From Octopus bimaculoides (lineage: Eukaryota), in assembly GCF_001194135.2 (NCBI RefSeq), contig NC_068983.1, positions 59,602,508-59,666,507 of the forward strand: a DNA stretch of 64,000 nt, given 5' to 3'. This document shows, one piece after another, positions 8,975-60,699 of this stretch (within the stretch, counting starts at the first letter, position 1; each line of letters begins with the position of its first letter). The notes beneath the pieces are model-generated. The model did not search any database. It saw only the letters and a list, made by a program, of their open reading frames with translations, and was not told the origin of the DNA. Position numbers and translations under genes: made by a program.

Positions 8975-9995
8975 CTGGGCAATGTTCAGAAAGCTTCTAC
9001 CCCTACTGGTGACAAAAGGTCTCTTGCTCAGAGTGAAAGGTAGATTGTATGATGCATGTGTGGGAACTGCTATGCTTCATGGCAGTGAAACATGGGCTGT
9101 GATTGTGGAAGACATGCGTAGGCTCGAAAGAAATGAAGCTAGCATGATCTGCTGGATGTGTAATGTCAGTAAGCACACACGACAGAGTGTAAACAAACAC
9201 CCTTAGAGAAATGTTAGACATAAGAAGCATTGGATGTGGAGTGCAAGAGAGATATTTGCATTGGTATGGTCATGTACGAGGAGAGCTGTGTGAAGAAGTG
9301 CCTCACCTAAACAGTGGAAAGAATCAGGAGTAGAGGGAGACCCAGGAAGACATGGGACGAGGTGGTGAAACATGACCTTCGAACATTAAGCCTCATAGAA
9401 GCAATGACAAAAGACTCAGAGCTCTGGAGGTATGCTGTAACTGAGAAGACCCAGCAAATAAAGTGAGTTCACAGCTGTAACCTACACTAGCGTCGCAAAA
9501 GTACCTTGGATTGTAGGGTGACATGCTGTGTTTGAGGAGACCTATTGAGTCAAGTACATCAACATCAACAGCAATATCAAAATCAAATTAAATGGAAATT
9601 GTAGTTGTGAGCCCTGTGCCGGTAGCATGTAAAAAGCATCATCCGAACATGGCTGATGTCAGTGCCGCTTTGACTGGCTTCCATGCCTGTGGCATGTAAA
9701 AAGCACCATTTGAGCATGATCATTACAAGCGTCACCATACTGGCACTTGTGCCGGTGGCACGTGAACAAAACATTCAAGCAAGGTCATTGCCAGTACTGC
9801 TGGAATGACTCCTGTGCAGGTGGCACGTAAAAAACACCATTTGAGCATGGCTGTTGCCAGTACCGCCAGACTGGCCCTCGTGCCGGTGGCATGTAAAAGC
9901 ACCCACTATTCTCTCGGAGTGGTTGGCATTAGGAAGGGCATCCACCTGTAGAAACTCTGCCAGATCAGATTGGAGCCTGGTTCAACCATCTGGAG
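8975..9995 (+). mobile_element. 5'-truncated RTE-clade LINE (RT C-terminus plus 3' tail with ~68-bp tandem units)
   Basis: WAMFRKLLPLLVTKGLLLRVKGRLYDACVGTAMLHGSETWAV...RLERNEASM, later GRPRKTWDEVVKHDLR (frameshifted). 3' UTR with five TGCCGGTGGCACGTAAAAAGCACC-like units. Confidence 0.92.
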
Positions 9996-10559: not shown

Positions 10560-12899
10560 GATATATATATATATATATANNNNNNNNNNNNNNNNNNNNN
10601 NNNNNNNNNNNNNNNNNNNNNNNNNNNNNNNNNNNNNNNNNNNNNNNNNNNNNNNNNNNNNNNNNNNNNNNNNNNNNNNNNNNNNNNNNNNNNNNNNNNN
10701 NNNNNNNNNNNNNNNNNNNATATACATATATATATGATACACACACACACACACACAAACATGCACATATGTATGAATACATTGTTTTCTTCATTAATAG
10801 GTGACTGAATTATGCAATTAAAAGGAGAATTTGGTTGCTATTTCATTCCAGATAAGCTGTTATTAATGGTTCCTTTGTATGTCTCTCAGGAGTATGATAC
10901 TGTTGCATAATTAACAAACTAATTAAAACCTTTTATTTTCTTCAGAAAATAACATTGGCTGATAGACACACACACATGCACACACACATATAGCATGTTC
11001 TGGTGACAATACCTGAACTGAAAGTTACAACCAGCTTACCTGTATTCAATTCTGCTCACCCAAACACTTCTAAATATTAAACTTCTTTCACTTGAATTCT
11101 ACCTAAATCACATGCACACATGCACACACGCACACACACACACACGCACACACAATGTTTATGTAGATGTGAACAATGATGCATCCTAGATGTCAACCAA
11201 CACTATATTATGAGCACTTTGTGTTGTGCTGACATCGATGACTGAATTGGAGTGAGAAGCAAACAAGGGAGCTGAATTGACAGGGTAAATTACTATTCTA
11301 TTGAATGAACAGTGATTGTAACCTTTGAATGAACTGAATTGAAAGATTAAGGGTTCTACTTGTAAAGTTATAAAAGGTGAAACTATTGTAATGCAATTAG
11401 AAAGTATTGTAAGTTTTACTTATTGGAGAGTACTGTATAAGGTTGTGCCAGCTTGCCCAAGAATATGATGAAATGCTTTTTAATTATTATTTATTTATTT
11501 ATTTATTTATCATATTGTATTTTAGGAGGGAGTTGAATGTATATACTCTTTTATAGTTCAATAGTTGGTTGCTAAAAAACTAGCTGAAGAATTTTAAAAG
11601 TCAGACTAGGAAAGTTTGTAACAGCTGGCATCTAAGATAATATAGGTAAAACTTCTTAAAGCAAATTAAGTTGTATTAAATTAATTAATCGATATCATAT
11701 TTTAGAAAGGAGATGAATTAGTATGTTGTTTTCAATAATTGATTTGTGCAATGCTAGTTCTAAAGTCTGATTACAGGAAGTTTTTAGCAATGGTTTCTAA
11801 GATAACATTGGTAAAACTTAAAACAAACTGATACAGTTTGTATCAAGTTGGTTCAAAGTGCCTTAACCTGTTTTAAGATTGTAGTTCTAATGGAAAACAT
11901 TGTCTATGTCACTGCTAAGTTTGAAAATAAGAATTTGGAAGGATATCCTAAAGTCAGAGGGAATCTTGGGTAGATTAGTATAAAAAGACTTAGCAGCTCT
12001 CCTTGGTAGTAGCTTTAAGATATTTAGCTGATCTGGTTGGCTAAGATAATCTGATACTAACTACTGAAGGATATGCTCTTGTACTTATAGTATATGAAAA
12101 TGTGTGTAACATTCCAAAAGCTAAGCTTTTCTTTGAGTACTATAGCCCTAAACATATATAATTTTTTTTATAAGACATGAGTATTACATATTACAATATG
12201 GTTCAATATGTTTGGAATTATGCAGAAATTCTAGAAAAAATATTTTATAATGGTCCTTTAAGGAGAAGACAAAGTATTATTCATCAATGTTAACTTCTAC
12301 TATTGCACTAATATGCTGTGTCTTTCTTCCCTCTGACTGTTTTACCATTACCACAATAGTTTCTGTTCTTCTGAACTGGCAACATGTTAGCTCAATACAT
12401 TAGTACATCACTGTTACCCACTCACAATTTCATCTGTCCTTCCCTAGTCCTATATTAACCAGTTTCTTTACTAAACATTCCTTCCTTGACCTTCAGCCTT
12501 CTAAATAACTTCTGCACATTTTCATTGCAAGCTTCTTAAAATGATAAAATGAATAACAATCTACTAAGCAGTTCCCTTTCTTTTATAATTATATGCATAA
12601 ACATCAATTCATGTTTAAACCTACCACATCAGACTGGCATGCAGATTTCTTTTCTCTTGTCTCTAATGTATATGCCATATTCTTCATTCTAACTTATTTA
12701 TGAAAGTTGGCATTTTTGCCATCCTGAAATTCAGTAATAATGAGACATTGGAGTAAAATGTGATCCTCTTCCCCATTAAATCCTGTTGAGCAGTCCTACT
12801 CATGACAGCATGGAAAACACTACCGAGCGCAGCTCTGTGTGCCTTGGGTATGTGCTGTGGTTTGCTGTGATGCTCTTAAAACCACAGCACATACCCATA

Positions 12900-17389: not shown

Positions 17390-18599
17390 TATAAACTATA
17401 TAGTAAACTGTAGACAAGCTACAGTGGTTGCAATATTTCATTCAGTTGGACTTAAAACAAACTGACACTTCGACTGAATTTATTATAGAGGATTAACTGT
17501 TAGTGGCTTTACCTCTGAGCCACAAGTTATAAACTGTTGCAATTGTTCATCTGAAATGATAGACAATTCTGGGGGTTCTTTTTTTTTTTGATTTTTTTCC
17601 CTGCTTAATACATACATTCAGCCAGGAAAACAATTTTTCTTTTACTAGACAATAGATTCATAACCACCTGTGAAGAAAGTAGATTTTTTATGTTTTATAA
17701 GCAAATTGATGCAGAATAGTAAGTAATATTAGAGTGTTTTTTTGTGAAATGGGCAGTAGATAATTTCAGGATGCTTAATGTAAATTTTTGCAACAGGCAT
17801 AGGTATGGCTGCGTGGTTAAGGTGTTTGCTTCATAAATGTATAGTTTCAAGTTCAATCCTACTGTGTAGCAGCTTGGCACAACCAAAGCCTTGTGAGTGG
17901 ACTTGGTAGATAAAAACTGAAAGAAGCTCATCATATACTTGTGTGCACATGTATGTATGTGTATGTGAATATATATACATACATATATATATATATGTAT
18001 ATNNNNNNNNNNNNNNNNNNNNNNNNNNNNNNNNNNNNNNNNNNNNNNNNNNNNNNNNNNNNNNNNNNNNNNNNNNNNNNNNNNNNNNNNNNNNNNNNNN
18101 NNNNNNNNNNNNNNNNNNNNNNNNNNNNNNNNNNNNNNNNNNNNNNNNNNNNNNNNNNNNNNNNNNNNNNNNNNNNNNNNNNNNNNNNNNNNNNNNNNNN
18201 NNTATATATAAAAGCATTTTGGCTGTTATTTCCAGCAGGTAGACATACTTAGTATATCCTTTGATTAATTTTATTCCTTCAGCTATTTAATGCTCTTTTT
18301 TGGGCCTGCAATCACTTATATTATTGATTCTGTTATTATCATTTTTAAATTGTTACACTAGATAATAACAGAGTCAATGGTATCTTTGCAAATTATTTTT
18401 CATGCATTATTTTTTCTCGTGAATTATTTGCTCCATATTGATATATATTTATTTATTTATTTAGGGAATATGAGAGTGTGATGAAGTGGTTTATCCATTA
18501 CTATGAGATTAATTCATTATTATATTTCTATTCATTAAGTTATTATAGAGAAGATGATGTATTTTAACCATTGATATGTAGAACAAAATTAAGTAACAT

Positions 18600-21384: not shown

Positions 21385-22045
21385 CTTTTACTCTTTTACT
21401 CTTTGACTGTGGCCATGCTGGAGCACCGCTTTTAGTCGAGCAAATCGACTCCAGGACTTATTCTTTAGAAGCCTAGTACTTATTCTATCGATCTCTTTTG
21501 CCGAACCGCTAAGTTACGGGGACATAAACACACCAGCATCGGTTGTCAAGCGATGTTGAGGGGACAAACACACACATACATATATATATATACATATATA
21601 CGACGGGCTTCTTTCAGTTTCCGTCTACCAAATCCACTCACAAGGCTTTGGTCGGCCCGAGGCTATAGTAGAAGACACTTGCCCAAGATGCCACCCAGTG
21701 GGACTGAACCCNNNNNNNNNNNNNNNNNNNNNNNNNNNNNNNNNNNNNNNNNNNNNNNNNNNNNNNNNNNNNNNNNNNNNNNNNNNNNNNNNNNNNNNNN
21801 NNNNNNNNNNNNNNNNNNNNNNNNNNNNNNNNNNNNNNNNNNNNNNNNNNNNNNNNNNNNNNNNNNNNNNNNNNNNNNNNNNNNNNNNNNNNNNNNNNNN
21901 NNNNNNNNNNNNNNNNNNNNNNNNNNNAATGACTATCATTATTATACAGTCTTCTAGCACACTTGCCCAAGATGCCACGCAGTGGGACTGAACCCGGGAC
22001 CATGTGGTTGGTAAGCTAGCTACTTACCTCACAGCCACTCCTACG
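21385..22045 (-). mobile_element. Young SINE family A copy split by an assembly gap
   Basis: CpG-rich, little-decayed copy at 21385-21711. Head repeated at 21960-22045 after N gap 21712-21927. Confidence 0.85.
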
Positions 22046-24070: not shown

Positions 24071-24157
24071 AATAATTACTGTGAAACATTGTGTAGAATA
24101 TATTGTATAAAGCATCATGAGTAAGGACAAAACAATGCGAAGTAAATGCAAGGCAAA

Positions 24158-24309
24158 TCACAAGAAAACTAATATGTGAATTAATGTAGACTTACCTTGT
24201 ATTCAATATTTCAGGATTATGACTCCATTTTCAAGAAAATGAGCTCATAACATCGAAATATTGAATACAAGGTAAGTCTACATTAATTCACATATTTGCT
24301 TTCTTGTGA
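24158..24309. repeat. ~152-bp near-perfect palindrome
   Basis: Outer arms 24158-24212 and 24255-24309 differ at 2 of 55 positions. Inner TTATGA..CATTTTC-AA-GAAAATG..TCATAA also pairs. Confidence 0.92.
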
Positions 24310-24560
24310 ATTAATTGTCTGGTTACTTGGGAGAAGCTCATAGTACAGAATTCTTTTCCAATCCCACCAGACACAAAGCAAGACCTTTTTAGGGTGAAGA
24401 TCCGCTTTTGGGGTGGCTAAGGGTGACTCATGTCGCTTACTCCAGGATCGCTTTCTCTGAACATTTCGGTAGATAATCCATTTCTCATTACCTGTCACAA
24501 TTTGCATTAAAAAAGGAGCGTTTTCATTCTGTTTATAAAGTGAATCCCAGATGGAAATGC
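24310..24560 (-). mobile_element. Internal fragment of a DD34D mariner (same family as 40833-42113)
   Basis: QIVTGNEKWIIYRNVQRKRSWSKRHESPLATPKADLHPKKVLLCVWWDWKRILYYELLPSNQTINS. Aligns by eye to about 41300-41545. Confidence 0.9.
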
Positions 24561-25164
24561 GATGATGATGATGATGTATATAATTGTTACTAAATGTGAC
24601 CAGTTTGTTAGAACACCCAAAACACTGGTCAAGTATACAGTCCCTGTCAGTACATATGCATGCAATTAGGTGCTTTAACTATAGCATTAGAGCTTTTTAG
24701 CTCGTATTTCTAGCAATGTAGGTATTCTAACACCCTAGTCACATTTAATGACAATTATAGTTTTCCTTTTTGGTAAAACATTGCTCACTGCTGTCTATAT
24801 TAAATTATTATGTAGTAATAACTTAAGTGGTTTGTAGTCCATCTGGCATCTATTTCTTGTGTTCAAATGTTGTCAATTTAGTGTCCTTTATCATAATTAT
24901 ATTTTATAATTATACTTAGAAATAAATTAACCAATATGGTCCTGTTAGTATGTTGGCCACTGATAAATCATTAAATAATGACTTTATCCTAATTATGTAT
25001 AAATATATATATATATATTTGAAAAACCTACACGACTAGGTGAAAAGCGTTTCATTTAATATGTGACATTAATAAAAATCTGTAAATGTACAAACATCCA
25101 GGTTTCTGAGTACCTTAATTAAAATTTTTTTCTATATAATTTCTGTACATCACCTCCAAACCTT

Positions 25165-25214: not shown

Positions 25215-25842
25215 ATCATCATCATCATCATCATCATCGGTTAATGTCCGCTTTCCATGCTAGCATGGGTTGGACGATATGACTGAGGACTGGTGAAAAC
25301 CAGATGGTTAAACCAGGCTCCAATATGATTTGGCAGAGTTTCTACAGCTGGATGCCCTTCTTAACGCCAACCACCCAAAGAGTGTAGTGGGTGCTTTTAC
25401 GTGCCACCGGCACGAAGGCCAGTCAAAGAGTACTGGCAACGGCCATGCTCGAAATGGTGTTTTTTAAATGCCATCTGCACAGGAGCAAGTCCAGTGGGAC
25501 TGGCAACGAACTCACTCGAATGTCTTTTCACGTGCCACTGGCACAAGTGCCAGGAAGGCGACGTTGGTAACGGTCACCCTCAAATGGTACTATTTACAGT
25601 CCACCAGCATGAAGCCAGGCAGCTGGTGCTCTGGCAACGATCACGCTCGGACAGTGCTCTTAGTGAGTTACTGGTACTGGTGCCATCACGATTTCACTTT
25701 CGCTTGCCCCAACAGGTCTTCGCAAGCCGAGTTTAGTGTTCAATGAAGACGTTGGCATGGGTGCCAGTCTACAAATTTAGTTTGATTTCGATTTCGATTT
25801 CACTTGCCTCAACAGGTCTTTGCAAGCGGAGTTTAGTATCCA
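25215..25842 (-). mobile_element. Family C retroposon / RTE 3' tail with several internal tandem units
   Basis: (CAT)n tail, CCATGCTAGCATGGGTTGGACG, repeated GTGCTTTTACGTGCCACCGGCAC-like units. Runs into N gap. Confidence 0.85.
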
Positions 25843-27198
25843 NNNNNNNNNNNNNNNNNNNNNNNNNNNNNNNNNNNNNNNNNNNNNNNNNNNNNNNNNN
25901 NNNNNNNNNNNNNNNNNNNNNNNNNNNNNNNNNNNNNNNNNNNNNNNNNNNNNNNNNNNNNNNNNNNNNNNNNNNNNNNNNNNNNNNNNNNNNNNNNNNN
26001 NNNNNNNNNNNNNNNNNNNNNNNNNNNNNNNNNNNNNNNNNNNNNNNNNNNNNNNNNNNNNNNNNNNNNNNNNNNNNNNNNNNNNNNNNNNNNNNNNNNN
26101 NNNNNNNNNNNNNNNNATATATATATATATATATATATATACATGGCAACCCTCAGTGCAATTTCTGTGCCCCTAATTCAAGCAATGGTAGAAAAAAAGA
26201 AAAACCATGATCAAGATGTCACACACTTTGATCAAACCACATGGTTGTAAATCAAACTAAACTTCTTAATCATGATGCGATGATGCCTGCATTGGAAAAG
26301 CAGCAACAGCAAAGCTATAAAATACGAGTTCACAGTGTAGCATTAATACATAATTATAGCTATCAATCCACTTCCTCTTCTGTCATGCATTACTATTCAT
26401 GAAATAATTTTATATCAAACAAGCTGCATCATACCTTTAATGACTCCACAGAAAAGTTATTTATGCTTCATAATCAAGAATAACTTTTAGCATTAACTCT
26501 AAGCCTTTAGATATAACTCTTTACTCAATGATTAACAAGAAAATTTTCAATCACTGTTACTAAACACTTTAGAGAATCAAAGTAGAATTTGAAACTATTC
26601 TGGAATCTAAATACCCACCATCTATAATCCATTAAACCAATGTAGGAGTGATGTATTTAATGTCTTGTTCTCCCCCAACTCCCTCTCTTTCTTCCTGTAT
26701 GTTTCTCTCTCATAGAATTCTATTTCTGTTTAATAGACACTTATCATTTCTGTGTTTAATTTTGCAAAAAACAACATTAAATAACAGTGTCATATCCTCA
26801 AATATCACACTGAAATTGCAAAAAAATATCTTTTCTGTAAAATTTCATAATTATTTCTCAAATATGGTCAATATATTTTTAGAACTAAGTACGGTTAAAA
26901 GAGAGGAGCATACTAAGAAATAATGCATAAAGCATCTGCTTAGTGTATTCAACCAACTTCATCATTATCATCATTGTTTTTACAACGACTTTTTCGTGTT
27001 TGTATGGATCAGATGTAATTTATTGAAACATTTTCTGTGCTTTGATGCCCTTCCTTTGCTTGTTTCCAAGCAAGTTGATATTTCCCACTGGCTATACATG
27101 TGTCCACAGGATATAAGAAATGAATGCCACCACTTGATGATAGTGACATTCATTCACAACTATCCCACAATGTCAAGGCAAGGAGACACAAGCATACA

Positions 27199-27245: not shown

Positions 27246-27408
27246 GAGATGTATTTATTTCAGTTTCAGTCCACCTAGTCCACCACTCACAAGGCTTTGG
27301 TCAACCCAAGGCTATAATAGAAGACACTTGCCCAAGGTGCCACATGGTGAGACTGAGCCAAGAACCATATGGTTGAGAAGCAAACTTCTTAACCACCTAG
27401 CCATGACA
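27245..27408 (-). mobile_element. SINE family A 5' half
   Basis: CCACTCACAAGGCTTTGGTC...GACACTTGCCCAAGGTGCCAC...AAGCAAACTTCTT. Confidence 0.8.
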
Positions 27409-27871
27409 ACCATAAAGATAAATTACAGAAATATCTCTTAGAGGCTAAATTAAGACATTTATAAGAAAATAAAAAATTGAATTTGTCATTCATTTCAATG
27501 TTCAATGTATTATTCAGTCACATCACTTAAATTGTTATTTTCTTACTGTATATACAATCATAAATTATTGCTTTATAATACACCAAACACCTAACATCTA
27601 AGATATGAATTAATAGCTGACTGCAGCTATTAAATAATATCAAAAAAATAAGCAGCATTTAATTTTACTTGCTCAGGAGTGTCACATCTAAGGGTCTCAT
27701 ATAGAGAAATGTATTTTATATATAATGCTTCATGCTAATATAATGGAAATAAAATGGTCAAGTACAAGAAACCACACCCTTTCAGCTTTATTCATTGTCT
27801 GTTATAGAATCATTAAATTTTATTATTTTGCTTTAATAAACTCTTTAAATTCTTTTTCTAAATTCTTATTG

Positions 27872-27965
27872 CTAATAATTTCTTTCTTTTTTTCTTTTTG
27901 CAGGTAAGTGTACCATTTTACTTTAAATTGAATTGCTATGAGCACGTATCTAAATTCAGGTAAGA
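27872..27965 (+). other. Candidate recursive splice site (3'ss immediately regenerating a 5'ss) with 56-nt RS-exon
   Basis: Branch motif CTAAT 27872-27876, pyrimidine run 27879-27899, CAG 27901-27903, GTAAGT 27904-27909, second donor CAG|GTAAGA with GT at 27960. No AG between 27808 and 27901. Confidence 0.6.
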
Positions 27966-28799
27966 TATGCATGCACTAACAGAAAACATTTTGTACCAAT
28001 AGCATAACACTGAGATACCTAAATCTAGCATTCTGTCCTTTTTCTTATTTTATCATTTATTCTAGATGGCATCAGATACTTTATACATCTTTGACTTATG
28101 GTATAGCCCTTAGACTCTTGATGGTGATGATTATCATAATTTAATGTTTAGCTTCCAAGCTGGTATGGGTGGATAATTTGACAGGATGTGACAAGCTGGG
28201 GGACTGTGTCTACTTTGACATGGCTTCTACAGCTGGATGCCTTTCCTAACACTAGTCACTTTACTGAGTGTACAGAGTGCTCTTACTTAATTGTAATGGC
28301 TTAAGTAATTCTAAATCTGAACTCAAGTGCCATCTAAGCAAATGATTTTCAAACAATTTTCCTGTTAATAATGAAAGTATTTTTGCCATTCAATTTCATA
28401 AATTTACTGACAATAATGTACAAGTACATTATTTTGCTAACATATTTTTCTTGATTTTCGACACTTTTGCTCCATCTGTGTACAAGCTTTTTAATTCCAA
28501 TGAAGCCATAACTGTTTATGAGCTATGTATGCACTGCTTCCTTCGTACTTAGACTGTGGATATTTTCAAAATGTTTTCTAGTTGTATTCAGGTGTTGTAA
28601 TTTAATTTCTGAATCATTATATACATTTCAGTTTTTAAGCCCTCCATTTTCTATAGCAATACATATATTTTTGTTCGGTTCATATGTGAGGCGAAATTAT
28701 TCAAGAACTACCTTCAATATATTGTATGCAGTGTATGTGAACAAAGATTGCTTTGTTAATTCAAGTCGACTGAAATAAGAAATAACAGAGGAAATTCAG

Positions 28800-30419: not shown

Positions 30420-32324
30420 GTGAGTGCTCAGGATCAGCCTGGATGAACTCATGCATTTATGGCATGAGATATTTGCCAAATACCATTAATGTAGACATTT
30501 TCCCACAAGTAGTATTTCCTTTCTCTATACATTTTTTAAAAAATTTACTATTCTAAGAACTAGAGCAATTATAGGCTTATTTATAACAAAATGAAAGCTA
30601 TATTGATCTTCAGTGTTGCAAAATTTCTGTCTCAGTGAAAAAAAGGACATGTCTGTTTGGATTTATTTATAATAGTAATAAATGAAATCAGACAGAAGGT
30701 TTTGTGACTGAACAGTTTTTCATTTTCTGTTAATATTCTCATGTTTCCACGAAGCAAAAAGTGAAATATCTGTGAAAAAAAGTGCACAAGTAGTTTGCTG
30801 AACACATGACAAATAGAGATGTTCATGGTTTTTCAAACTCACTTAGAATGTGTGTTGCTATTTTTATTGCAGTTAGTTCTGGGTCAACTCAGATACAGTA
30901 GACCTATGATCGAATATACTTGCAGTTCTTTACTAGTTGGGCCATGTGGGCACTTGTACATCAACCCTTGTATTCTGTCATGATTTAGTGATGGGAAAGA
31001 GCCATAATGTTTTCAGGGAGACACTAGATATCAGTGAAAATCAACTGAATAATCTATTCTTGAGTCTTTTCAACCTGTAGACTATAGACACTCTCAAGAA
31101 ATCCCCCCCAAACCCAGTTGTGTTATTATGGTGCATTGCTGAACTTTACAAACATGACAGTCCTATCAACCTGGACTAACCATGATGCCTTCTTGACAAT
31201 ACTGTTCTGTATGTAATCATTCTGTGTCTCAGTATTACTGGTTTCTAGAGTTTGTCAAACATTCATTGCCATGCAGAATACATCAAGCTATCAGCCAAAT
31301 TCATCATGAAGATTATCTAGATAAAAATCATGAACTTCAGACATCTTCAAATAAACATAACATTTTACAGAAAAGAGCTTTTGACCCAATTCTATTTTTC
31401 TTTTTTTAAAGATTGGAAACTTCAGCTTCTTTCAGAAACAATCAACTTCAATGACAGATCTCGACCTTCAATTTTACTTATTCCCACCCTAGTGTATCTT
31501 GCTACCTTCCTTTGACTATAAAGGTCAGTAGTCTTTCTTTGCCTTGTGGCTACAGCAAAAAAAGATAATATAGCAGACAATATCGAAGGGATTGAAAACA
31601 AGCACTTTCTTCTTCAACAAAGCCGGCATCAGTCTCCGTTGGTTCTACTGATGCTTTCCTGTGAATTTACTGAAAGAGGGCAAGAATAGCCTGCAGTAAA
31701 TGGGCCTACTCTTATGATGTGCCTGTGGGCTGAAGAATGCAGCTGGGAGAGGAGACTTACCCTTGGTTAGTCAGGGTAACTCTGGATCTGTGAGATTCTT
31801 TGATTGATCTCTAATGGTTGTCTCCCAAATGAGACATTTGCTTTCTCTCTTTTTGTACATAACTGTTTCAAAGCCTGTTTCCACCCCACCCCACTACTGT
31901 TTTTTTCTATTTCATAATCAGTTCTGCAAAACCTCCTAAAGCCTTTTGTTATTTGTCCTCGGTTTGACTTTGTGGCAAATAAAAAAACTATTGTTGTTGT
32001 TGTTGGTGCTGCTGTTAGCACCTGCATTATATCGTTATTCATGTTAAGATCCCCATTACCTTTATGATTACCATTAATCGATATCAGCTCTGCTTTCATC
32101 CTATTACTCATGGTCTCTTCCACCTTAATTACTCCCATAACACTACTTCTGAACATTGCTTTATATAAGTATAAATATTAGTTTTATTACTGTTGTAATG
32201 CAACTAGTGCTGATAGTCCCTCCTCTAAGCTTTTGTATCATTATGCCCAGGCCACATTTATAAATATCAATCAAACTAGAAAGATTAGCTTGCACACTCA
32301 TAATATGAGCATACTATACATATG

Positions 32325-32648: not shown

Positions 32649-33293
32649 AGGGCCCTAGGATATGTAACACACTGCCTAAATATCAATCTTGAGAAATTAG
32701 GCTTCTCCATACCAGAAAGAAGAAAGTTAATTCGAAGACTACAGATCCAATCCATCATTGCAACTGTAAGAATCTGTAAAACTTTCCAGAAGTTTATCAT
32801 TTAAATATATATGAGCATGTCTAGATATGCAATTATGTGCATGAGAATACATACATAAAACATACAAATCTGCACATACATACAAAAATACCTTGTTGTT
32901 GATGTTGAAATTCCAGTGAAGGAGCCTTGGATCTAGGTTAGAAACCTGTTCTTTCTCTATTGGCAAGAAATCTTGAAATAAACTGAATAGTGACATACAT
33001 ACATTAGGCTTCTCAAAACCAGAAATGAAAAAGTTAATTTGAAGACTACAGATCCAATCCAGCACTGGAACTGTAAGAACCTGTAAAACTTTCCAGAAGT
33101 TTATCATTTAAACATATATGAGCATGTCTAGATATGTAACTATATGCATGAGAATACATACATAAAACATAGATACATACAAACAAAAACACCCTGTTGT
33201 TGATGTTGTAATTCCAGTGGAGGAACCTTTGATCTAGGCTAGAAACCAGTTCTTTCTCTATTGGCAAGAAATCTTGAAATGAACTGAATAATG
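32649..33293 (+). mobile_element. Two head-to-tail 5'-truncated RLE-type (R4-like) retrotransposon 3' ends within (CATA)n
   Basis: Unit 1 (32649-32993) encodes ALGYVTHCLNINLEKLGFSIPERRKLIRRLQIQSIIATVRICKTFQKFII*. Unit 2 (33005-33293) starts at LGFS. Both share the 3' UTR and end in GACATACAT. Confidence 0.78.
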
Positions 33294-34747
33294 ACATACA
33301 TACATGCATGCATACATTATTACATGCATGCATACGTTATTACATGGATGCATACATATGTACGTAAATTATATATAATTATGTATAAACATAATTTAAC
33401 ATGAAACTGAAACATTACTCCATAGTTTTCAGTTGAGTACATGTCTATTATATTTTTACAAGGGAAAGGTCAACTGTAATTTCAAAGTTTCAGTTTGTTT
33501 GCCTTCATCAGATTGTTACATAAATTTGTGTCTATGTATGTGTGTGTGTGTGTGTGCATTGAGCGTGTGTGTGTGTGTGTGTGTGTGTTTGTGTGTGTGT
33601 GCATGTGTGTGTGTTTCTATGTTTGCATGCATAAACAGTGGTTGCAGTGAGAATTAGTAGACCACATTGATTCCAATACATATTTAACTTCAGCACATAT
33701 TAATCAATCTCTATTTGTCAAACTGCTAAATTACAGTAGATAGAAGAACTTGACATAAACAATGTCTTTGCCTTCGTTGTTTTTATCCTTTTTAATATTT
33801 CATTGGAGTTTTTGTTTTGCAATGTTGATTTAATTGTTGTGTTCTGAAGTAAACTAAAAACCTTAAGATCAGATTTTGGTTGTTTTATGTCTTTCTAAAA
33901 GCTAAGCTTCACAATTGTTTAAACATTGAAGTACTTCAATCATGCAATTGATTTTTCTGTAAGTTGTTGAACTTCAGGTTATAACCTAATTGAGCAGGTG
34001 TTTCAGACGTGACTACCCCATCTCTTTTTAACATACAAAGTCTGGGATTGCATAATCCAGTATTTCTTTACTTTATAGACTTTAAAGGTTCTTTACTTTA
34101 TAGGTTCAATATGAGAGATTATCAAATATGTCTTTTGTATTGAGATAATGTAGTTTGAGGAAGATTTGGCTGTTATTTCTAACAGGTCTCACAGTTATGT
34201 AGAGACTCATAACGTTGGAAGTATTTAAAACAACTTTCTATATTTAATTAACATTGATCTTTCCAGCATTTAGTACTATTATTCTTACAAAACAATATAT
34301 TTACTGTTGTTTAACTCAGTTACACCTGCCAAACTACACCCTCTTATGTAATTTATATATTTTTTCCTATTATATTTACTAAATTTCTCAAAAACAAGTT
34401 TTCCTGTTTTCATTTGTTTTGTTTTTCTTCCTAATCTAATTCTGTATGGAAGCTTTTACATTTTCAAGCTTTTGCTTTCATCTTGGCGTAAATAAAAACA
34501 ATAGTCAATAACATGTAAAAATTAATTGAGATAATTTGAAAGCATTTTGTTTTAGAACCAGTTCAATGTATCTTTTACTCAGCAAGTAAAGGGAAGAACT
34601 TGAAACAAATAATTGAGTACAAATGTTTTAAAATGTCACATATTATTACTACTGCACTAACCCTATTAATCTATTAATGATGAGAAATTTTTCATACACA
34701 TAAATAAGAGGTAAAAGACACATACATGCACACACACACACACACGC

Positions 34748-35445: not shown

Positions 35446-35469
35446 AGCCAAGTGAGACCTAAATCCAAG

Positions 35470-35990
35470 GCCTCTGCCAGGATGTGTACCTTCCTACGTT
35501 GGACAATAAACTCCGCTTGCGAAGACCTGTTGAGGCACGTGAAATCGAACTAATTTCGACGGATGGCACCCATGCCAACGTCGTCTCCTTCATTGGAAAC
35601 AGAAACTCGGGTTGCAAAGACCTGTTGAGGCAAGCGAAAGTGGAATTGTGATGGCACCGGTGCCCTGGCACTTGTGCCAGTGGCACGTGTAAGGACATTC
35701 GAGCAAGATCGTTGCCAGTGCCGCTGGACTGGCTCCCATGCAGGTGGCATGTAAAAGACACCATTTTGAGTGTGGCTGTTGCCAGTACCACCTAACTGGC
35801 TCTTGTGCTGGTGGCACATAAAGCACCCACTACACTCTCGAAGTGGTTGGCATTAGGAAGGGCATCCAGCTGTAGAAACTCTGCCAAATCAAATTGGAGC
35901 CTGGTGTAACCACCTGGTTCATCAGTCCTCAGTCAAATCGTCCAATCCATGCTAGCATGGAAAGCAGATGTTAAACGATGATGATGATGA
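35470..35990 (+). mobile_element. Family C retroposon / RTE 3' tail with three internal units
   Basis: GCAAGCGAAAGTG...GTGGCACGTGTAAGG...GGAAAGCAGATGTTAAAC(GAT)n. Confidence 0.87.
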
Positions 35991-37279: not shown

Positions 37280-38134
37280 TTATGAGTGGTTTTACTTCCT
37301 GGAATACTTTGGCTGAATTAATCCACACCCTACTGTGATTTTCACAAAGAAGATAATTGCTCATTCCGTGCTTTGCGCTGTTAAGTCTCATTATGTCATC
37401 TGAAATGCTCATCTCTCTCTAAGATCAATAATACTGGTTACCTTTAATCACGCTCAAATCCAATTACTGGAAAGGAGAAATACAGTGAATTGAATCAACT
37501 TTGGTATGTACAGTATTATTTTATCAATCTCAGTAGAGAGAAATGCAAAGTTGCTCTGTCATTTGAACTAAAAACATTGATAAAACTAAATATTCTCAAG
37601 CATGTTTTGTGTTCTATTATCCCTACTCACTCATTAGTTTTTGTTGGTTGAAAATATCAGGAGTGTCAATACATTAAAGAAATCATTTGAAACTGACCAA
37701 CCTGGAAAAAGTACTTATCTATGAGCCATGTATTTTTCACTTTATCTTTTCTGGTATATACAGAAACTAAACTTAACCAGTCATACATAGAGATCAGATA
37801 AAATGAACTAAAGAAATTACACAAACCTATGAAACTAAGTTGCATAGAGCCAAATCAAACTGTTATCAAATGAATATTATATGTAACTGTCACCAAATGT
37901 GTGGAGTACTACTTTCTTTCATTTGTCCACTCATTTCATCATCATCATTTAACGTTTGTTGTCCATGCTGGCATGGGTTAGACAGTTTGACTAGGGCTTG
38001 TAAGCTAAGGGGCTGCACCAGACTCCATTCTGATTTGGCATGGTTTCTGCAGCTGGATGCTCTTTCTAACACCAACCACTCCAAAAGTGTAAGGTGTAAA
38101 ACCACTTTGAAAGTTTATATAAATATATGTATGT

Positions 38135-38243
38135 CGTTGTTCAGTTTTATTTCAAGATTTCTCACCAATAGAGAAAGAGCTGGTTTCTAACCTAGATCCA
38201 AGGCTCTTTCATTGGAATTTCAACATGAACAACAGGGTATTTT
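38135..38243 (-). mobile_element. Third 3' end of the (CATA)n-associated RLE element
   Basis: Reverse complement of the 3' UTR at 32890-32993. The 3' junction again abuts ACATACAT. Confidence 0.8.
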
Positions 38244-38430
38244 TGTATGTATGTATGTATGTATTCATGTGTGTATGTATGTATAGATATACACACATGT
38301 GCACATAGACATGTGTATGTATGTTTGCATGTGTATACATAATACATACATATGTCTGTATGTGTATTGGAATTTATTGATTTTCTAATTTATTACTGAA
38401 AGTGCATATAACATATGATGAACATATAAT

Positions 38431-40832: not shown

Positions 40833-42113
40833 TTGCGTTGTCTGGAAAGTTCGTGCCAATTTTTAAAGGAAAGAAAAAGGTCAATAAATACTTGCCATTA
40901 CATTTTTAATCAACCAAATATGAACCATTTTATTGCACAATGTGTCTCCATCTTTCCTTTAACTCGAAAATACCCTCTTCCCAGAATTGAGGTGGTTTCA
41001 TGGCAAAGAATTCATCAAGGTATCTTTTTACGTCATCCAAGGAATTGAAATTTTTACCATTAAGGCTTTTCTACAGAGACCTGAATAAGTGGAAATCTGA
41101 AGGAGCAATATCTGGTGAATATGGAGCGTGGGGTAACACATCCCAGCCGAGCTGTAGCAATTTTTGTCTAGTTTCCAAAGAAACGTGCGGTCTTGCATTA
41201 TCATGTTGGAAAACAACATCCTTCCAGTTGGCCAATTCTGGACGTTTGTCTTGAATTGCTGCTTTTAACTCGTCCAGTTTTGTGCAGTATTTCTCAGAAT
41301 GAATTGTCTGTTACTTGGGAGAAGCTCATAGTACAGAATTCCTTTCCATCCCACCAGACACAAAGCAAGACTTTTTTAGGGTGAAGACCTGCTTTTGGGG
41401 TGGCTAAGGGTGGCTCATGTCGCTTACTCCAGAATCGCTTTCTCTGAACATTTCAGTAGATAATCCATTTCTTATCACCTGTTACAATTTGCTTTAAAAA
41501 GGCGCATTTTAATTCCGTTTATAAAGTGAATTACAGATGGAAATGCGATCCAAAAGGTTCTTCTCACTTAACTCATGTGGCACCCAAACATCGTAGCTAT
41601 TTGTGTACCCAAGCTTTACCAGGTGCTCATAAAAGATGGATTTTGATAGGTTGAGGCTTTCTGCCAATTCTCGGGTTGTGCAATGTGGGTTATTCTCAAT
41701 TAATGACTTGATTTGGTCATCATCTGTAGTGGATGGTCTGCCTGATCGCTCTTTATCAATAAGTCTACAATCTCCAGCTCAGAACCTTGCAAACCACTTC
41801 TGTACAGTTCTTTCGAATAAAGAAACATCACTGTAAACTGCATATATTTCTTTGGTTGCTTGTGAAGCATTTTTCCCTTTAAAGAAAAAGAAAAGCATCA
41901 AGTGCCGAAAATGAACTTTCTTATCTTCCATTTTAAAGGGTTACAGAATTAATACAGGTTATAGGAACATAAACCTTCTTCCACGAAAAGATAGCTTAAA
42001 CTGTGCTCTAAATGGGGGTGTAGTCAAGTCCTATTTTATGGACTCAACCATGTTTTAAAATAAGTTGAAAGATAAGCTACTATAAATCGGCACGAACTAT
42101 CCGGACAATCCAA
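40833..42113 (-). mobile_element. Full-length (~1.28 kb) DD34D mariner with ~30-bp TIRs
   Basis: TTGCGTTGTCTGGAAAGTTCGTGCCAATTT vs the reverse complement of the right end, TTGGATTGTCCGGATAGTTCGTGCCGATTT. TA-type flanks. Confidence 0.95.
40906..41931 (-). pseudogene. Mariner transposase pseudogene
   Basis: MEDKKVHFRHLML... WVPHEL, TGD-region, HDNARPH and YSPDIAPSDFHLF (34 residues between the last two catalytic Asp). At least three in-frame stops and frameshifts. Confidence 0.93.
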
Positions 42114-46856: not shown

Positions 46857-47497
46857 TAGGTGCAGGCATGGCTGTAGGGTAAGAAGTTTGCATCCCAATC
46901 ACATTGCTCCAGATTCAGTCCCACTGCATAGCACCTTGGGCAAGTGTCTTCTACTACAAGCTTGGGCCAATAAAAGTCTTGTGAATGGATTTGGTAGATG
47001 GAAACTGAAAGAAGTCCATCACACACACACATATATGTGTGAGTGTATGTGTGTGCATACATATATATGTATGTATGTATGTATGTGTATATATGCATGT
47101 ATGTATATGTATGTATGCATGTATGCAATGGCAGACTGACCAGGTTGCCAGCTTGCTTAATGGCAAGTGAGCCCCTGTGCCATTAGAATCCATATATGGG
47201 GGCCCATGTTAGTATATAATGGGCCTATACCCTCAGGTTTGAGAATTTTTTTATTCATTCCTGGAAGAATGCATTAATTATTTCAGCCTGGCTGTGCTTG
47301 TAGACAGTTGGAAAGAATACTTTTAACAAAAAAATAAATAAATAAATGATAGCATTGTAGTTGTGGGTGGGGCCCCCTTAGTCCCCTGGCAACCAATAAT
47401 TTTTTCACCCAGTCTGCCACCGAATATATGTATATATATGTATGTATGTATATATACATATATGTATATATATATATATATATATATNNNNNNNNNN

Positions 47498-52960: not shown

Positions 52961-53926
52961 AATACATTCACACATGCATAATCTCACAAAAGTTCACTTG
53001 AATAAAAATACATGCTCATAAAAAAAAAACCACATTTCACATATACATACATTTGTTAAAACACGTGAATATTGAAATGTAAGACAAGGTTAGACATCTA
53101 ATTATATACAGGAACACAGATATATTTAGACAAAAATCAGAGGTTGGTTTGTTTATTTAATCCCCCAAAATTTTATAGAAGTAATTGACATAAGAATTCG
53201 TTTTCATTCTATAATGTTAACTTTCACTTAGCACAGAATTCTTTCTTTGATGATGAGTTATTTTGCAGAAAATATTAATGTCTTTTGATGTCGTTACAGT
53301 TGCATCGTATGCCAGCAAGAGAATTCTAGAGTCATAACTAAATTAATTTTCATTTTGCTATTCAATGTTATTCCATTTATTAAAATTTTCTCTGCTTTAT
53401 TTTTTTTAAATACTGAACATTTATACAAAGCTCTTTACAATTTCTACGAAATTATGCAGCTACATCCTTTCTTCTCCTTCTCTCAGTTACTCTTATCAGA
53501 TGCATATACATATATGAAATTATTTTTGAGAGAGAGAGAGAGAGAGCAAAAAAGAGAAACAAAAGACAGAAAGAAAAAGAGATAGATAGATATAGAGAGA
53601 GAGAATGAGTATGTTTGTGTGTCTATGAGTGTGTGTGTGTATGCATGCTTATGTGGGTACATAATTATTTGAAGCACTAGATAGTATGATACCTGAATAA
53701 GTTCTCTGTATAAAATCATATGTGATATTGAAAACAACATACAAATAATGAAAATATATTTCATTTTCCTGTAGAATAATTTTGAGGTTATAACCCCAAG
53801 TATTTCCGGCAAATCATGTACATAATTAGATATGTATGTACATTTGTATGTATGCATACATCTATTTCTGCATGCGCATATATATATATATATATATATA
53901 TANNNNNNNNNNNNNNNNNNNNNNNN

Positions 53927-55263: not shown

Positions 55264-55741
55264 NNNNNNNNNNNNNNNNNNNNNNNNNNNNNNNNNNNNN
55301 NNNNNNNNNNNNNNNNNNNNNNNNNNNNNNNNNNNNNNNNNNNNNNNNNNNNNNNNNNNNNNNNNNNNNNNNNNNNNNNNNNNNNNNNNNNNNNNNNNNN
55401 NNNNNNNNNNNNNNNNNNNNNNNNNNNNNNNNNNNNNNNNNNNNNNNNNNNNNNNNNNNNNNNNNNNNNNNNNNNNNNNNNNNNNNNNNNNNNNNNNNNN
55501 NNNNNNNNNNNNNNNNNNNNNNNNNNNNNNNNNNNNNNNNNNNNNNNNNNNNNNNNNNNNNNNNNNNNNNNNNNNNNNNNNNNNNNNNNNNNNNNNNNNN
55601 NNNNNNNNNNNNNNNNNNNNNNNNNNNNNNNNNNNNNNNNNNNNNNNNNNNNNNNNNNNNNNNNNNNNNNNNNNNNNNNNNNNNNNNNNNNNNNNNNNNN
55701 NNNNNNNNNNNNNNNNNNNNNNNNNNNNNNNNNNNNNNNNN

Positions 55742-55844: not shown

Positions 55845-56860
55845 TCGTTTAAATGTCTGCTTTCCATGCTGGCATGGGTTATATGATTTGACTGAGGACT
55901 CGCAAGCCAGGAAGTTGTACCAGGCTCCAATCTGATCTGGCAAGGTTTCTACTGCTGGATGCCTTACACCAACCACTTCAAGAGTGCAGTGGATGTTTTT
56001 TACATGCTACTGGCATGGGTGCTAATCAGGCAGTACTGGCATCAGCCACGACAATGATTTCATTTGATTCAACAGGTCTTCTCAAGCACAGTATATTGCC
56101 CAGTGATTGAAGGGTGCTCTTAAATGTGCTGGTTATGCGACACTGGCATAAACCATGGTTATGGTCTCACTTTGCATATCTTCAATGATCTCGGTTGCTT
56201 GTCATTGCCTCCATGAGGCCCAATGTTCGAAGGTCATGCTTCACCACCTCATCCCATGTCTTCCTGGGTCTACCTCTTCCACAGGTTTCCTCCACTGTTA
56301 GGATGTGACACTTTTTCATACAACTGTCTTCATCCATATGCAACACATGACCATACCAGCACAGTTGTTTCTCTTGCACACCACATCTGATGCTTCTTAT
56401 GTCCAATTTTTCTCTCAGGGTGCTTACACTCTGCTGTGTATGTACACTGACATTACACGTCCAGCGGAGCATACTAGCTTCATTTCTTGCAATCATACAC
56501 ACGTCCTCAGCAGTTACAGCCCATGTTTCACTACCATGTAGCATGGCTGTTCGCACACATGCGTCATGCTGTCTACCTTTTACTCTGAGCGAGAGGCCCT
56601 TTGTTACCAGCAGAGATAGGAGCTCTCTGAACTTTGCCCTGACTATTCTTATTTAGCAGCTGCACTCTTATTCTATTCTTATTCTAACAGCTATGCTCTT
56701 GGTCACCTAGGTAATGGAAACTGTCATCTACTTCTAGTTTTTCCCCATGGCATGTGATGGAAGCTGTTCTCTGCACATTTTCAGTGTTTATTGCCCCTGT
56801 GCATCTGGCACACACAAAAACTATCTTTCCACGAAGATATATGATATGATATGATAGGTT
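55845..56860 (-). mobile_element. 5'-truncated RTE LINE with 3' tail
   Basis: ORF 56182-56556: RTAMLHGSETWAV...WYGHVL...GRGRPRKTWDEVVKHDLR. Upstream EKLEVDDSFHYLGDQ. Tail ends in (GAT)n. Confidence 0.92.
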
Positions 56861-58557: not shown

Positions 58558-58865
58558 ATCATCATCATCATCATCATCATCATTTAAACATCCACTTTTC
58601 ATGCTGACATGGGTTGGACAGTTTGACTGAGGACTGGCAAGCCGAGAGGATGCACCAGGCTGAAATCTGATCTGGCAAGGTTTCTACAGCTGGATGCCCT
58701 TCCTAATGCCAACCACTCTGAGAGTGAAGTGAGTGCTTTTTACACGCCACTGGCACAGGAGCTAGTTACGCAGCACTGGTGCTTTTTATGTACCACCAGC
58801 ATGGGTGCCAGTCAGGTGGCACTGGCATCAGTCACACTTGAATGGCGCTTTTTATATGCCACCAG
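58558..58865 (-). mobile_element. Family C retroposon
   Basis: (CAT)n tail, CATGCTGACATGGGTTGGACAG, GTGCTTTT.A.GCCAC units. Confidence 0.82.
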
Positions 58866-60699
58866 CACAATTTGTTTACATTGCAGTAACCTAGTAGTTC
58901 AGCAAAAGAGACCAATAGAAGTACCAAACTTTAAAAAACAAGTCCTTTAAAAAAAAATTTCAAAATTTCTATTATATACTAGAAATTTCTATTAGTTTTT
59001 AATTTGTGATTAATTCTATTTTAAAATGCTTATAAATCTATCTCTACCTGTTATTTTTTTATCTTTTACTTGTTTCAGTCAACTGCCTAATGAAATGATG
59101 ACTTAATGGAATAAATTGCTTTTTAATGTTGCCAGCATTAATTTTGTAAATATGCAAGAGAGATTAATTCATAACCTACTATGCCTGAAGTACAGAGATA
59201 ATGTGTTTTGCTGTATAATTTCCTTCTCAATATATTGGAGTGGTATCAGGATATTCAATGCCTAAGGCCAGTCCTACACGTAATGTGTACTCCTCTCTCC
59301 CAGCATAAAATATGTATCCCTTTTGTCAGCTCTATTATGTATACCCACTTCTAACCCTGTAAGTTTCATCTCCTCTGATCCCTACAGTGGGCCCTCTTTT
59401 CTTCCATCCCTTCAATGTGTACCCCCTTCTTTCAGCTCAAAAATGTTTTTCTCTCTTCTCCCAGGCTTTTGACTGGGGACTGGTGAACCGGATGATCATT
59501 CTAAAAACAAACAATCAAATCATTGAAGTCTAGAAGCTATAATATAATACAAGATTAATTCAAAATGATGTGAATAAATAAGCATTATATTTGGAAGAGT
59601 AATCTGCCTGTTAAAGGGTTAAAATAAGTCTAACCAAGATAAGCTTTTCCTTATACAGATTTCGTAAAAAGGGGAAGTTTCACTTTGATTTAAGTTTCCA
59701 AAAATGACTTTTTTTTTTTTTTTTTTGGGAAAGAAATTCCTAGAGGAAATAACATTATTTATTTCAATTTATTTGTTCAGTTAATTATTTCATTACTTCA
59801 TTAATATTCTTATTGTACTTGTAAATTGGTTATGTGAAGCATAAGAAGTGACCCTTGTAAGGGATATGAGGATGTTAGCTGTCTTATTCATTAACTTGAT
59901 GCCATTTAGTTGAGAAGTTTTCTTCACAATTTTGATTTCCCAGGTCCATATCCATTGAAGGGCATCTTGAGCAAGTGTCTTTTAACATAGCCTTAAGTCA
60001 ACTAAAGTCTTATGATTGAAACTGTGTGTGTACCTAAAAAGTTTACTTCCAAACCACCTGATTTGGAGTTCAGTCCTACTGTATAGCATCATAGGCAAGT
60101 GTCCTCTACTTTGGGCCAGTCAAAATCTGGTGAATGGATTTGGTAGACAGAAAGTGAAGGAAGCCTGTTGTGTATATGATCATCATATCATCATCATTTA
60201 ATGTTTTTTTCCCATGCTAATATGTGTTATTGTCTCCTTGACTTGACATCATATAGTTGTGAACAAGCATTACCAACATAAATGTTTTCAATCTTCCATG
60301 AAAAACATGTCTGTCCATGGGGAAATATTAACTTACTTGGGAACATTTAAAACGGGTGAAAACAGGGAACAGCTGAGGACAGACAGGAAGGACATCTCCC
60401 CATAAAACATTTGCCTCAATGAGTCTTTTTCTGGTCCAAACAAACATGGAAAAGTAGACATTAAAACAATGATGAAGATGATGAATAAAAAGATTGGTAT
60501 TAAAGCAGAGGACTTTAGTAAACATTTTGAGGTATTAATTTGAAAAATAAAAATGAATGCATAGGTAAAGTAATTTATGAAAGAAATTAATGGAAGATAT
60601 ACTATTAAGATGGGAAACCTCTTTACACGACATATTGTCTGTCCAATTCTATTAGAAAACTGAATTCTCAACTCTAGTATTGTCTAATCTTAAACAATA

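What the first reader, a model, noticed from the sequence alone, without database searches (positions are those of the whole stretch)
27808..27965. Recursive splice site with RS-exon architecture in a cephalopod-like long intron
Seen: no AG for 94 nt (27808-27901), CTAAT branch motif with its A 28 nt upstream, a 21-nt pure pyrimidine run, then CAG directly followed by the perfect donor GTAAGT. A second strong donor, CAG|GTAAGA, lies 56 nt downstream. No coding exon is apparent for tens of kb either side. Established: this juxtaposed 3'ss/5'ss plus short cryptic exon is the signature of Drosophila ratchet points and vertebrate RS-exons in very long, often neural, introns. The 56-nt exon would shift frame if included, and two of its three frames contain stops. 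Inference: the plus-strand host intron is removed stepwise. I am not aware of recursive splicing having been described in molluscs.
Basis: partly seen in the sequence, partly recalled or inferred. Interest (0 to 1): 0.85.

Follow-up and report, generated by a model that had tools for sequence, protein, structure and literature searches.

The report
Candidate recursive splice site in octopus
A non-coding stretch of octopus DNA carries a textbook 'ratchet point' (an intron-end signal fused to an intron-start signal, followed by a 56-base decoy exon) that is far too good to be chance; if RNA data confirm it is used, it would be the first stepwise (recursive) intron removal reported in a mollusc.

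Summary
The motif is not a chance match. I scored it with a weight matrix built from 85 experimentally supported Drosophila ratchet points. The site (27879-27915, + strand) scores 37.9 bits, above all 85 fly sites (13.9-36.1). The next best of 367 AGGT sites in the window scores 6.9. Null models expect about 1e-5 to 1e-9 such sites per 64-kb window. A second donor, CAG|GTAAGA, lies 56 nt downstream and is weaker than the regenerated donor, which matches the cryptic RS-exon model. The window is octopod: its transposon remnants are closest to Octopus vulgaris and O. bimaculoides. It is rich in repeats and has no detectable coding exon. The site sits in a 725-nt block that is single-copy within the window. 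Three things could not be tested here: plus-strand transcription, the identity of the host gene, and conservation or use of the site. No cephalopod genome browser, orthologous locus or RNA-seq was reachable. My verdict is a very strong sequence-level candidate for a recursive splice site (confidence about 0.55). It would be a new member of a known kind, in a phylum where the held literature reports none. Its function remains an inference.

The parts
27808..27901 (+). AG-exclusion zone of 94 nt upstream of the acceptor. It is T-rich and G-poor; the wider span 27808-27903, which adds the acceptor AG, is 16.7% GC.
27865..27876 (+). Two candidate branch points of the yTnAy type: CTTAT (A at 27868, -35) and CTAAT (A at 27875, -28).
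   Evidence: Fly recursive lariats have branch points peaking near -30.
27879..27899 (+). Polypyrimidine tract of 21 consecutive pyrimidines, with T at -5 and -6.
   Evidence: TT at -5/-6 is found in 100% of the 85 fly ratchet points scored here and in 99.5% of those in Duff et al..
27900..27909 (+). Ratchet-point core GCAG|GTAAGT, a 3' splice site abutting a consensus 5' splice site, with the junction at 27903|27904.
   Evidence: The 37-mer 27879-27915 scores 37.9 bits with the fly ratchet-point matrix.
27904..27959 (+). Putative cryptic RS-exon. It is 56 nt (not a multiple of 3) and 30.4% GC, has stops in 2 of 3 frames, and has no protein homologue.
27957..27965 (+). Donor of the RS-exon, CAG|GTAAGA. 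Its intronic part scores 6.4 bits, against 11.4 bits for the regenerated donor.
27406..28130 (.). Block that is single-copy within the window and holds the site. SINE-like repeats flank it at 27300-27405 and 28130-28286.

Best explanation
The segment 27865-27965 on the + strand is a ratchet-point-type recursive splice site with a 56-nt cryptic RS-exon. It would sit inside a long intron of an unidentified plus-strand octopus gene.

Proposed mechanism, every step inferred from the fly and vertebrate model:
1. U2AF and U2 bind the branch point and the 21-nt pyrimidine tract, while U1 binds the donor at 27960. Together they define the 56-nt exon.
2. The upstream exon is ligated to 27904, which removes the first intron segment as a lariat.
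3. The ligation regenerates a donor, NNN|GTAAGT, at the new junction.
4. That donor is stronger than CAG|GTAAGA, so it is used in the second step. The 56-nt exon and the downstream intron segment are then removed, and no trace is left in the mRNA.

Shown here: the sequence anatomy, its extreme improbability by chance, and its quantitative fit to validated fly sites. Inferred: transcription, strand, and actual use.
For: - The anatomy was verified.
- The fly ratchet-point matrix (85 high-confidence sites from Pai et al. 2018, S1 Table) gives 37.9 bits. Fly sites scored leave-one-out give 13.9-36.1, with a median of 26.9. The next best AGGT in the window scores 6.9.
- Under an iid background, the expectation is 9e-10 per window and 4e-5 per 2.7-Gb genome. 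The maximum in 99 Mb of Markov-5 sequence was 25.8 bits.
- The empirical product of the two halves is 2.4e-5 per window.
- A consensus-count simulation found no site with at least 19/20 pyrimidines in 799 window-equivalents.
- A downstream strong donor at +56 has p of about 0.01.
- RS-exon properties match the published description: about 50 nt, out of frame, poorly coding, and an RP donor stronger than the exon donor.
- The site is not in a window repeat.
- No coding exon was detected in the window, which is consistent with a long intron.
Against: - There is no evidence of transcription, of strand, or of a host gene. The window could be intergenic or antisense to a gene.
- Conservation could not be tested because no orthologous locus was reachable.
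- Strand proxies are uninformative.
- The matrix comes from flies, not from cephalopod splice sites.
- Real genomes hold more low-complexity T tracts than Markov models do, so the null expectations are optimistic.
- In flies, only 6% of introns longer than the smallest recursive intron (11.3 kb) are recursively spliced.
- Recursive splicing has not been shown in any lophotrochozoan.
Confidence: 0.55

Rival explanations
1. The motif is non-functional. It arose by chance in T-rich, low-complexity, untranscribed or antisense DNA and is never used by the spliceosome.
For: - Looser versions of the motif do occur by chance. The expectation is 0.12-0.18 per window for at least 15/20 pyrimidines plus YAG|GTRAG.
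- A weaker example sits on the minus strand at 9307, inside a retrotransposon remnant.
- No transcription evidence is available.
- Most of a 2.7-Gb genome is not sense-strand intron.
Against: - At the observed quality, the expectation is about 1 per genome from empirical half-site rates, and far less from the iid and Markov nulls.
- Requiring the downstream donor multiplies that by 0.01-0.16.
- The site outscores all 85 validated fly sites.
Confidence: 0.2
2. 27904-27959 is a conventional expressed exon that merely happens to begin with GTAAGT. It could be a cassette, poison, UTR or lncRNA exon, and it may or may not be recursively spliced (an 'expressed RS-exon').
For: - It has a strong acceptor, a strong donor and a plausible exon length.
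- Frame 0 is open.
- Annotated RS-exons number in the hundreds to thousands in vertebrates.
Against: - It is 30.4% GC, no higher than the surrounding non-coding DNA at 33.4%.
- It has stops in 2 of 3 frames and a length that shifts the frame.
- No homologue was found for ORFs spanning it.
- A random exon start scores at least 11.4 bits as a donor at only about 2e-5 per position.
Confidence: 0.15
3. 27903 is simply the donor of an ordinary upstream exon, for example 27808-27903 (96 nt) with its acceptor at tgttatag|A (27807). 27959 would then be an alternative donor.
For: - An AG at 27806-27807 is preceded by a moderately pyrimidine-rich stretch.
- The 96-nt interval is a multiple of 3 and is open in one frame.
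Against: - The interval is 16.7% GC and ends in a 21-nt pure pyrimidine run with a branch-point motif. That is the anatomy of an intron's 3' end, not of an exon.
- The ORF 27692-27904 has no homologue.
- The acceptor at 27807 is mediocre, and a competing AG lies 21 nt upstream of it.
Confidence: 0.05

Closest known systems
Drosophila intronic ratchet points (Ubx, kuz, Bx, luna; Hatton 1998, Burnette 2005, Duff 2015, Joseph 2018/2021, Pai 2018)
   Same: - A 3' splice site juxtaposed to a 5' splice site around AG|GT.
- A very strong pyrimidine tract with TT at -5/-6.
- Frequent G at -4 and C at -3, with GTAAGT or GTGAGT after the junction.
- A branch point near -30.
- A short cryptic exon of about 50 nt that is out of frame and poorly coding, with a downstream donor weaker than the regenerated one.
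- No annotated exon nearby.

The motif score is above the whole fly range.
   Different: - The phylum is different (Mollusca).
- The site has not been shown to lie in a long sense-strand intron.
- There is no saw-tooth, junction, lariat or conservation evidence, and those are what define fly sites experimentally.
Vertebrate RS-exons in very long neuronal introns (CADM1/2, ANK3, etc.; Sibley 2015, Blazquez 2018)
   Same: - An exon-definition architecture in which a short exon starts with a partial donor.
- Competition between the regenerated donor and the exon's own donor.
- Inclusion of the exon would shift the frame or introduce a premature stop.
   Different: - The vertebrate cases lie in very long introns of known neuronal genes and are modulated by the exon junction complex. 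Neither the host gene nor the intron length is known here.
- The motif here is closer to the fly consensus, with its extreme T-tract.
Poison, decoy or pseudo-exons in long introns
   Same: A short non-coding exon-like unit flanked by good splice sites deep in non-coding DNA.
   Different: Such exons do not need a consensus donor as their first six bases. That feature is the improbable one here.

Membership tests
Drosophila-type intronic ratchet point | A 3' splice site juxtaposed to a 5' splice site around AG|GT | tested here: met
   gCAG|GTAAGT at 27900-27909
Drosophila-type intronic ratchet point | A prominent pyrimidine tract with TT at -5/-6, and an overall motif strength within the range of validated sites | tested here: met
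   The tract is a 21-nt pyrimidine run with TT at -5/-6. The site scores 37.9 bits, against 13.9-36.1 for 85 fly sites.
Drosophila-type intronic ratchet point | A short cryptic RS-exon (about 50 nt, usually out of frame) whose downstream donor is weaker than the regenerated donor | tested here: met
   The exon is 56 nt with stops in 2 of 3 frames. Its donor GTAAGA scores 6.4 bits, against 11.4 bits for GTAAGT. The exonic half of the regenerated donor is unknown.
Drosophila-type intronic ratchet point | Located on the sense strand inside a long intron (over about 11 kb) of an expressed gene | not testable with these tools
   No annotation or host gene was reachable. The absence of detectable coding exons in 64 kb is consistent with this feature but does not prove it. 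Strand proxies are uninformative.
Drosophila-type intronic ratchet point | A sharp conservation peak on the AG|GT core across related species | not testable with these tools
   No orthologous cephalopod locus could be fetched.
Drosophila-type intronic ratchet point | RNA evidence: saw-tooth read density, junction reads from the upstream exon into the site, and recursive lariats | not testable with these tools
   No RNA-seq access.
Vertebrate RS-exon | An exon that starts with a partial 5' splice site and reconstitutes a strong donor after ligation to the preceding exon | tested here: inconclusive
   The intronic half, GTAAGT, is perfect. The preceding exon, and so the last three bases of the reconstituted donor, are unknown.
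Vertebrate RS-exon | Lies in a very long intron of a (mostly neuronal) gene, and its inclusion triggers a frameshift or premature stop | tested here: inconclusive
   A length of 56 nt shifts the frame, and 2 of 3 frames carry stops. Intron length, host gene and reading phase are unknown.
Ordinary coding exon | An open reading frame with a protein homologue and coding-like composition | tested here: not met
   No homologue was found for ORFs covering 27692-28141. GC is 30.4%, against a window mean of 33.4%.
Transposon-borne repeat | Other copies in the window or in related DNA | tested here: not met
   27406-28130 is single-copy in the window and absent from 22 kb of other cephalopod-like DNA that shares many other repeats with the window. 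The power of this test is low, because no genome-wide repeat library was available.

The most novel reading that the evidence does not exclude
This is a working ratchet point in an octopus. It would be the first recursive splice site in Lophotrochozoa. It would show that the fly-type grammar (long T-tract, TT at -5/-6, GCAG|GTAAGT, and a cryptic exon of about 50 nt) is shared across protostomes. It would also suggest that recursive splicing is an ancestral bilaterian way of handling very long introns, and it could be abundant in the intron-rich, neurally complex cephalopod genomes.
Probability: 0.5. Interest if true: 0.7.

Novelty: new member of a known kind. Interest (0 to 1): 0.55.

Why it matters
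In the literature I could reach, recursive splicing has been demonstrated in Drosophila and in vertebrates. The one evolutionary survey I could read sampled no lophotrochozoan. Cephalopod genomes are large and rich in repeats. A validated site here would extend the phylogenetic range of the mechanism. It would argue for deep conservation of the ratchet-point grammar. It would also give a concrete seed motif for a genome-wide search, using enrichment on the sense strand of long introns over the antisense strand as the test. In practical terms, a constitutively recognised out-of-frame cryptic exon is also a hazard for gene annotation.

Tried and rejected
1. **Host gene or exons.** I surveyed the six-frame ORFs and the GC islands. 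I ran Pfam on 10 ORFs, which found only mariner Transposase_1 and HTH remnants. Two chimeric protein searches covered 14 ORFs around the site and the 66 longest non-repeat ORFs, and neither found a homologue. An 18.5-kaa query exceeded the 5000-aa limit. ORFs shorter than 58 aa outside 26.2-30.6 kb therefore remain unsearched.
2. **Orthologous loci and conservation.** Exact-protein look-ups of three window ORFs found nothing. O. vulgaris DNA is reachable only through annotated proteins, and the one locus I fetched is a different transposon copy. A metagenome scan for a 28-mer across the site found nothing.
3. **Intronic ncRNA as a strand marker.** There were no Rfam hits and no tRNAs.
4. **Strand proxies.** By my reading, SINE copies are about 8 antisense to 4 sense and other transposon fragments about 5 to 5. 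AATAAA occurs 80 times on + and 83 on -, and GTRAGT 25 and 33. None of these is informative.
5. **Repeat origin.** The site block is single-copy in the window and absent from L001 and L002.
6. **First Markov simulation.** It timed out and was redone in vectorised form.
7. **Rejected readings.** A coding exon, and a donor of an upstream 96-nt exon; see the rival explanations.

Full report
**Observation.**
- On the + strand, the last AG before the site is at 27806-27807, and 27808-27901 is AG-free.
- Two yTnAy motifs lie at -35 (CTTAT, A at 27868) and -28 (CTAAT, A at 27875).
- 27879-27899 is a run of 21 pyrimidines.
- The core reads GCAG|GTAAGT, with the junction at 27903|27904.
- A second donor, CAG|GTAAGA, has its junction at 27959|27960, which leaves a 56-nt interval.
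- That interval is open in frame 0 and has stops in the other two frames.

**Context.**
- The window is 33% GC, has nine N gaps, and is full of microsatellites and dispersed repeats.
- It holds mariner transposase remnants (Pfam Transposase_1) at 24286-24678 and 41074-41310 on the minus strand.
- It also holds several retrotransposon tail fragments. The closest named relatives of the fragment at 56185-56652 are uncharacterised proteins of Octopus vulgaris (80% identity) and O. bimaculoides (73-84%).
- Window repeats align to an O. vulgaris chromosome segment at up to 86% identity. The organism is therefore an octopod; the species is not determined.
- The site lies in a 725-nt block (27406-28130) that is single-copy within the window. 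SINE-like repeats flank the block, and it has no match in the other cephalopod-like DNA I could fetch.
- No Rfam family and no tRNA is present.
- No coding exon could be detected. 80 non-repeat ORFs, including all of 58 aa or more, gave no hit against 5.8 billion proteins, a set that includes Octopus annotations.

**Is it more than chance?** I ran three independent checks.

1. *Consensus counting.* The window has 20 acceptor-like sites with at least 17/20 pyrimidines, and only this one is followed by a donor.
   - The expectation per window is 0.17 for a loose definition and 0.0005 at the observed stringency.
   - A 100-Mb Markov simulation agrees.
2. *A weight matrix built from 85 high-confidence Drosophila ratchet points* (37-mers copied from S1 Table of Pai et al. 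2018).
   - The octopus site scores 37.9 bits.
   - The fly sites scored leave-one-out span 13.9-36.1 bits, with a median of 26.9.
   - The other 366 AGGT sites of the window peak at 6.9 bits.
   - The exact iid tail gives 7e-15 per position.
   - 99 Mb of order-5 Markov sequence never exceeded 25.8 bits.
3. *Real-sequence half-site ranks.*
   - The acceptor half (26.5 bits) is the best of 6,953 AG sites, and the next best is 18.7.
   - The donor half (11.4 bits) is among the top 3 of 7,177 GT sites.
   - The product is 2.4e-5 per window, or about one per 2.7-Gb genome.
   - Requiring a strong donor 25-150 nt downstream multiplies this by 0.01-0.16.

The composite is therefore very unlikely to be a random occurrence. 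One caveat applies: real genomes contain more T-rich low-complexity sequence than these models assume.

**Fit to the known mechanism.** Published descriptions define a ratchet point by these features:
- a tandem acceptor|donor pair with an unusually strong pyrimidine tract;
- TT at -5/-6, seen in 99.5% of sites;
- branch points peaking near -30;
- a regenerated donor that outcompetes the cryptic exon's donor.

The octopus site has every one of these sequence features:
- TT at -5/-6, and G at -4 and C at -3, as in 51% and 91% of the fly sites;
- GTAAGT at the junction;
- branch candidates at -28 and -35;
- a 56-nt, 30%-GC exon that shifts the frame;
- a downstream donor (6.4 bits) weaker than the regenerated one (11.4 bits).

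**Most likely mechanism (inferred).**
1. Exon definition across 27904-27959.
2. Ligation of the upstream exon to 27904, with release of the first lariat.
3. Regeneration of NNN|GTAAGT at the new junction.
4. Use of that donor in a second step that discards the 56-nt exon together with the downstream intron segment.

**What is missing.** The experimentally defining features could not be examined with the tools available:
- location in a long sense-strand intron;
- saw-tooth coverage;
- junction and lariat reads;
- a conservation peak.

Attempts to reach an orthologous locus or a host gene failed. Strand proxies (transposon orientation, poly(A) signals, donor-like hexamers) show no bias.

**Rivals.**
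- *Chance motif in untranscribed DNA (about 0.2).* It is disfavoured by the statistics but cannot be excluded without RNA data.
- *Ordinary expressed exon that happens to start with GTAAGT (about 0.15).* It is disfavoured by composition, stops, frame shift, the lack of a homologue, and the rarity of such a start.
- *27903 as the donor of an upstream 96-nt exon (about 0.05).* That interval is 16.7% GC and ends in a branch point plus pyrimidine tract, so it looks like the 3' end of an intron.

I put the recursive-site reading at about 0.55. Part of the basis is the fly precedent: from the numbers, 91 of 160 motif-plus-conservation predictions were later confirmed.

**Novelty.**
- Full-text searches of the held library found no paper connecting recursive splicing with cephalopods, octopus or molluscs. 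The single co-occurrence is two unrelated entries in one reference list.
- The cross-species survey in Blazquez et al. 2018 sampled no lophotrochozoan.
- If validated, this would be a new member of a known kind in a new phylum. It is not a new mechanism.

Noticed in passing
window 24155-24312: A near-perfect palindrome with two 78-nt arms, 87% complementary and 2 nt apart. Each arm contains ...gaaatattgaatacaagGTAAGTCT. It lies directly beside a mariner transposase remnant (24286-24678, minus strand). It may be back-to-back terminal inverted repeats or a MITE-like hairpin. It accounts for two of the four AGGTAAGT matches in the window.
   Followed up: partly
window 9611-9898; also 25224-25748, 35463-35990, 58559-58947: A GC-rich (up to 55-57%) repeat family with an internal 66-bp tandem unit. 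It recurs four or more times in the window and is shared with an O. vulgaris chromosome segment (L001) at 75-79% identity. It creates long spurious ORFs.
   Followed up: partly
window 41031-41940 (minus strand): A larger mariner-like element remnant split over several frames. It has an HTH region and a partial DDE domain with QHDNARPH...PYSPDIAPSDFHLF. It is degraded by frameshifts.
   Followed up: partly
window 9307 (minus strand): A weaker ratchet-like motif, ctgattctttccactgtttag|GTGAGG (6.6 bits), on the antisense strand of a retrotransposon remnant. It is a useful example of what chance produces.
   Followed up: yes
window 32742-33336 and 38123-38305: A locally duplicated element encoding ...SLFS.FQDFLPIEKE.VS.LD.R.LHWN.N.NN.VFL... 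in adjacent and inverted copies. The family is unknown and has no homologue.
   Followed up: no
window 31770-32177 (minus strand): The longest non-repeat ORF in the window (136 aa stop-to-stop, 129 aa from its ATG). It lies in a local GC island (up to 47%). It has no Pfam hit and no homologue, so it is probably spurious, but this is not explained.
   Followed up: partly
L002 (ENA assembly ERZ22665968, contig k127_13032110): A 1.6-kb contig in an ENA metagenome assembly that carries a cephalopod-type retrotransposon fragment. It is 79% identical over 661 nt to window 56174-56831. This suggests host (mollusc or cephalopod) DNA in that metagenome.
   Followed up: no
window N runs at 460-543, 10580-10719, 18003-18202, 21712-21927, 25843-26116, 47488-47497, 53903-53926, 55264-55741: These assembly gaps sit inside or next to (TA)n, (TG)n or (CA)n microsatellites. 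The variable gap lengths suggest a short-read scaffolded assembly.
   Followed up: no
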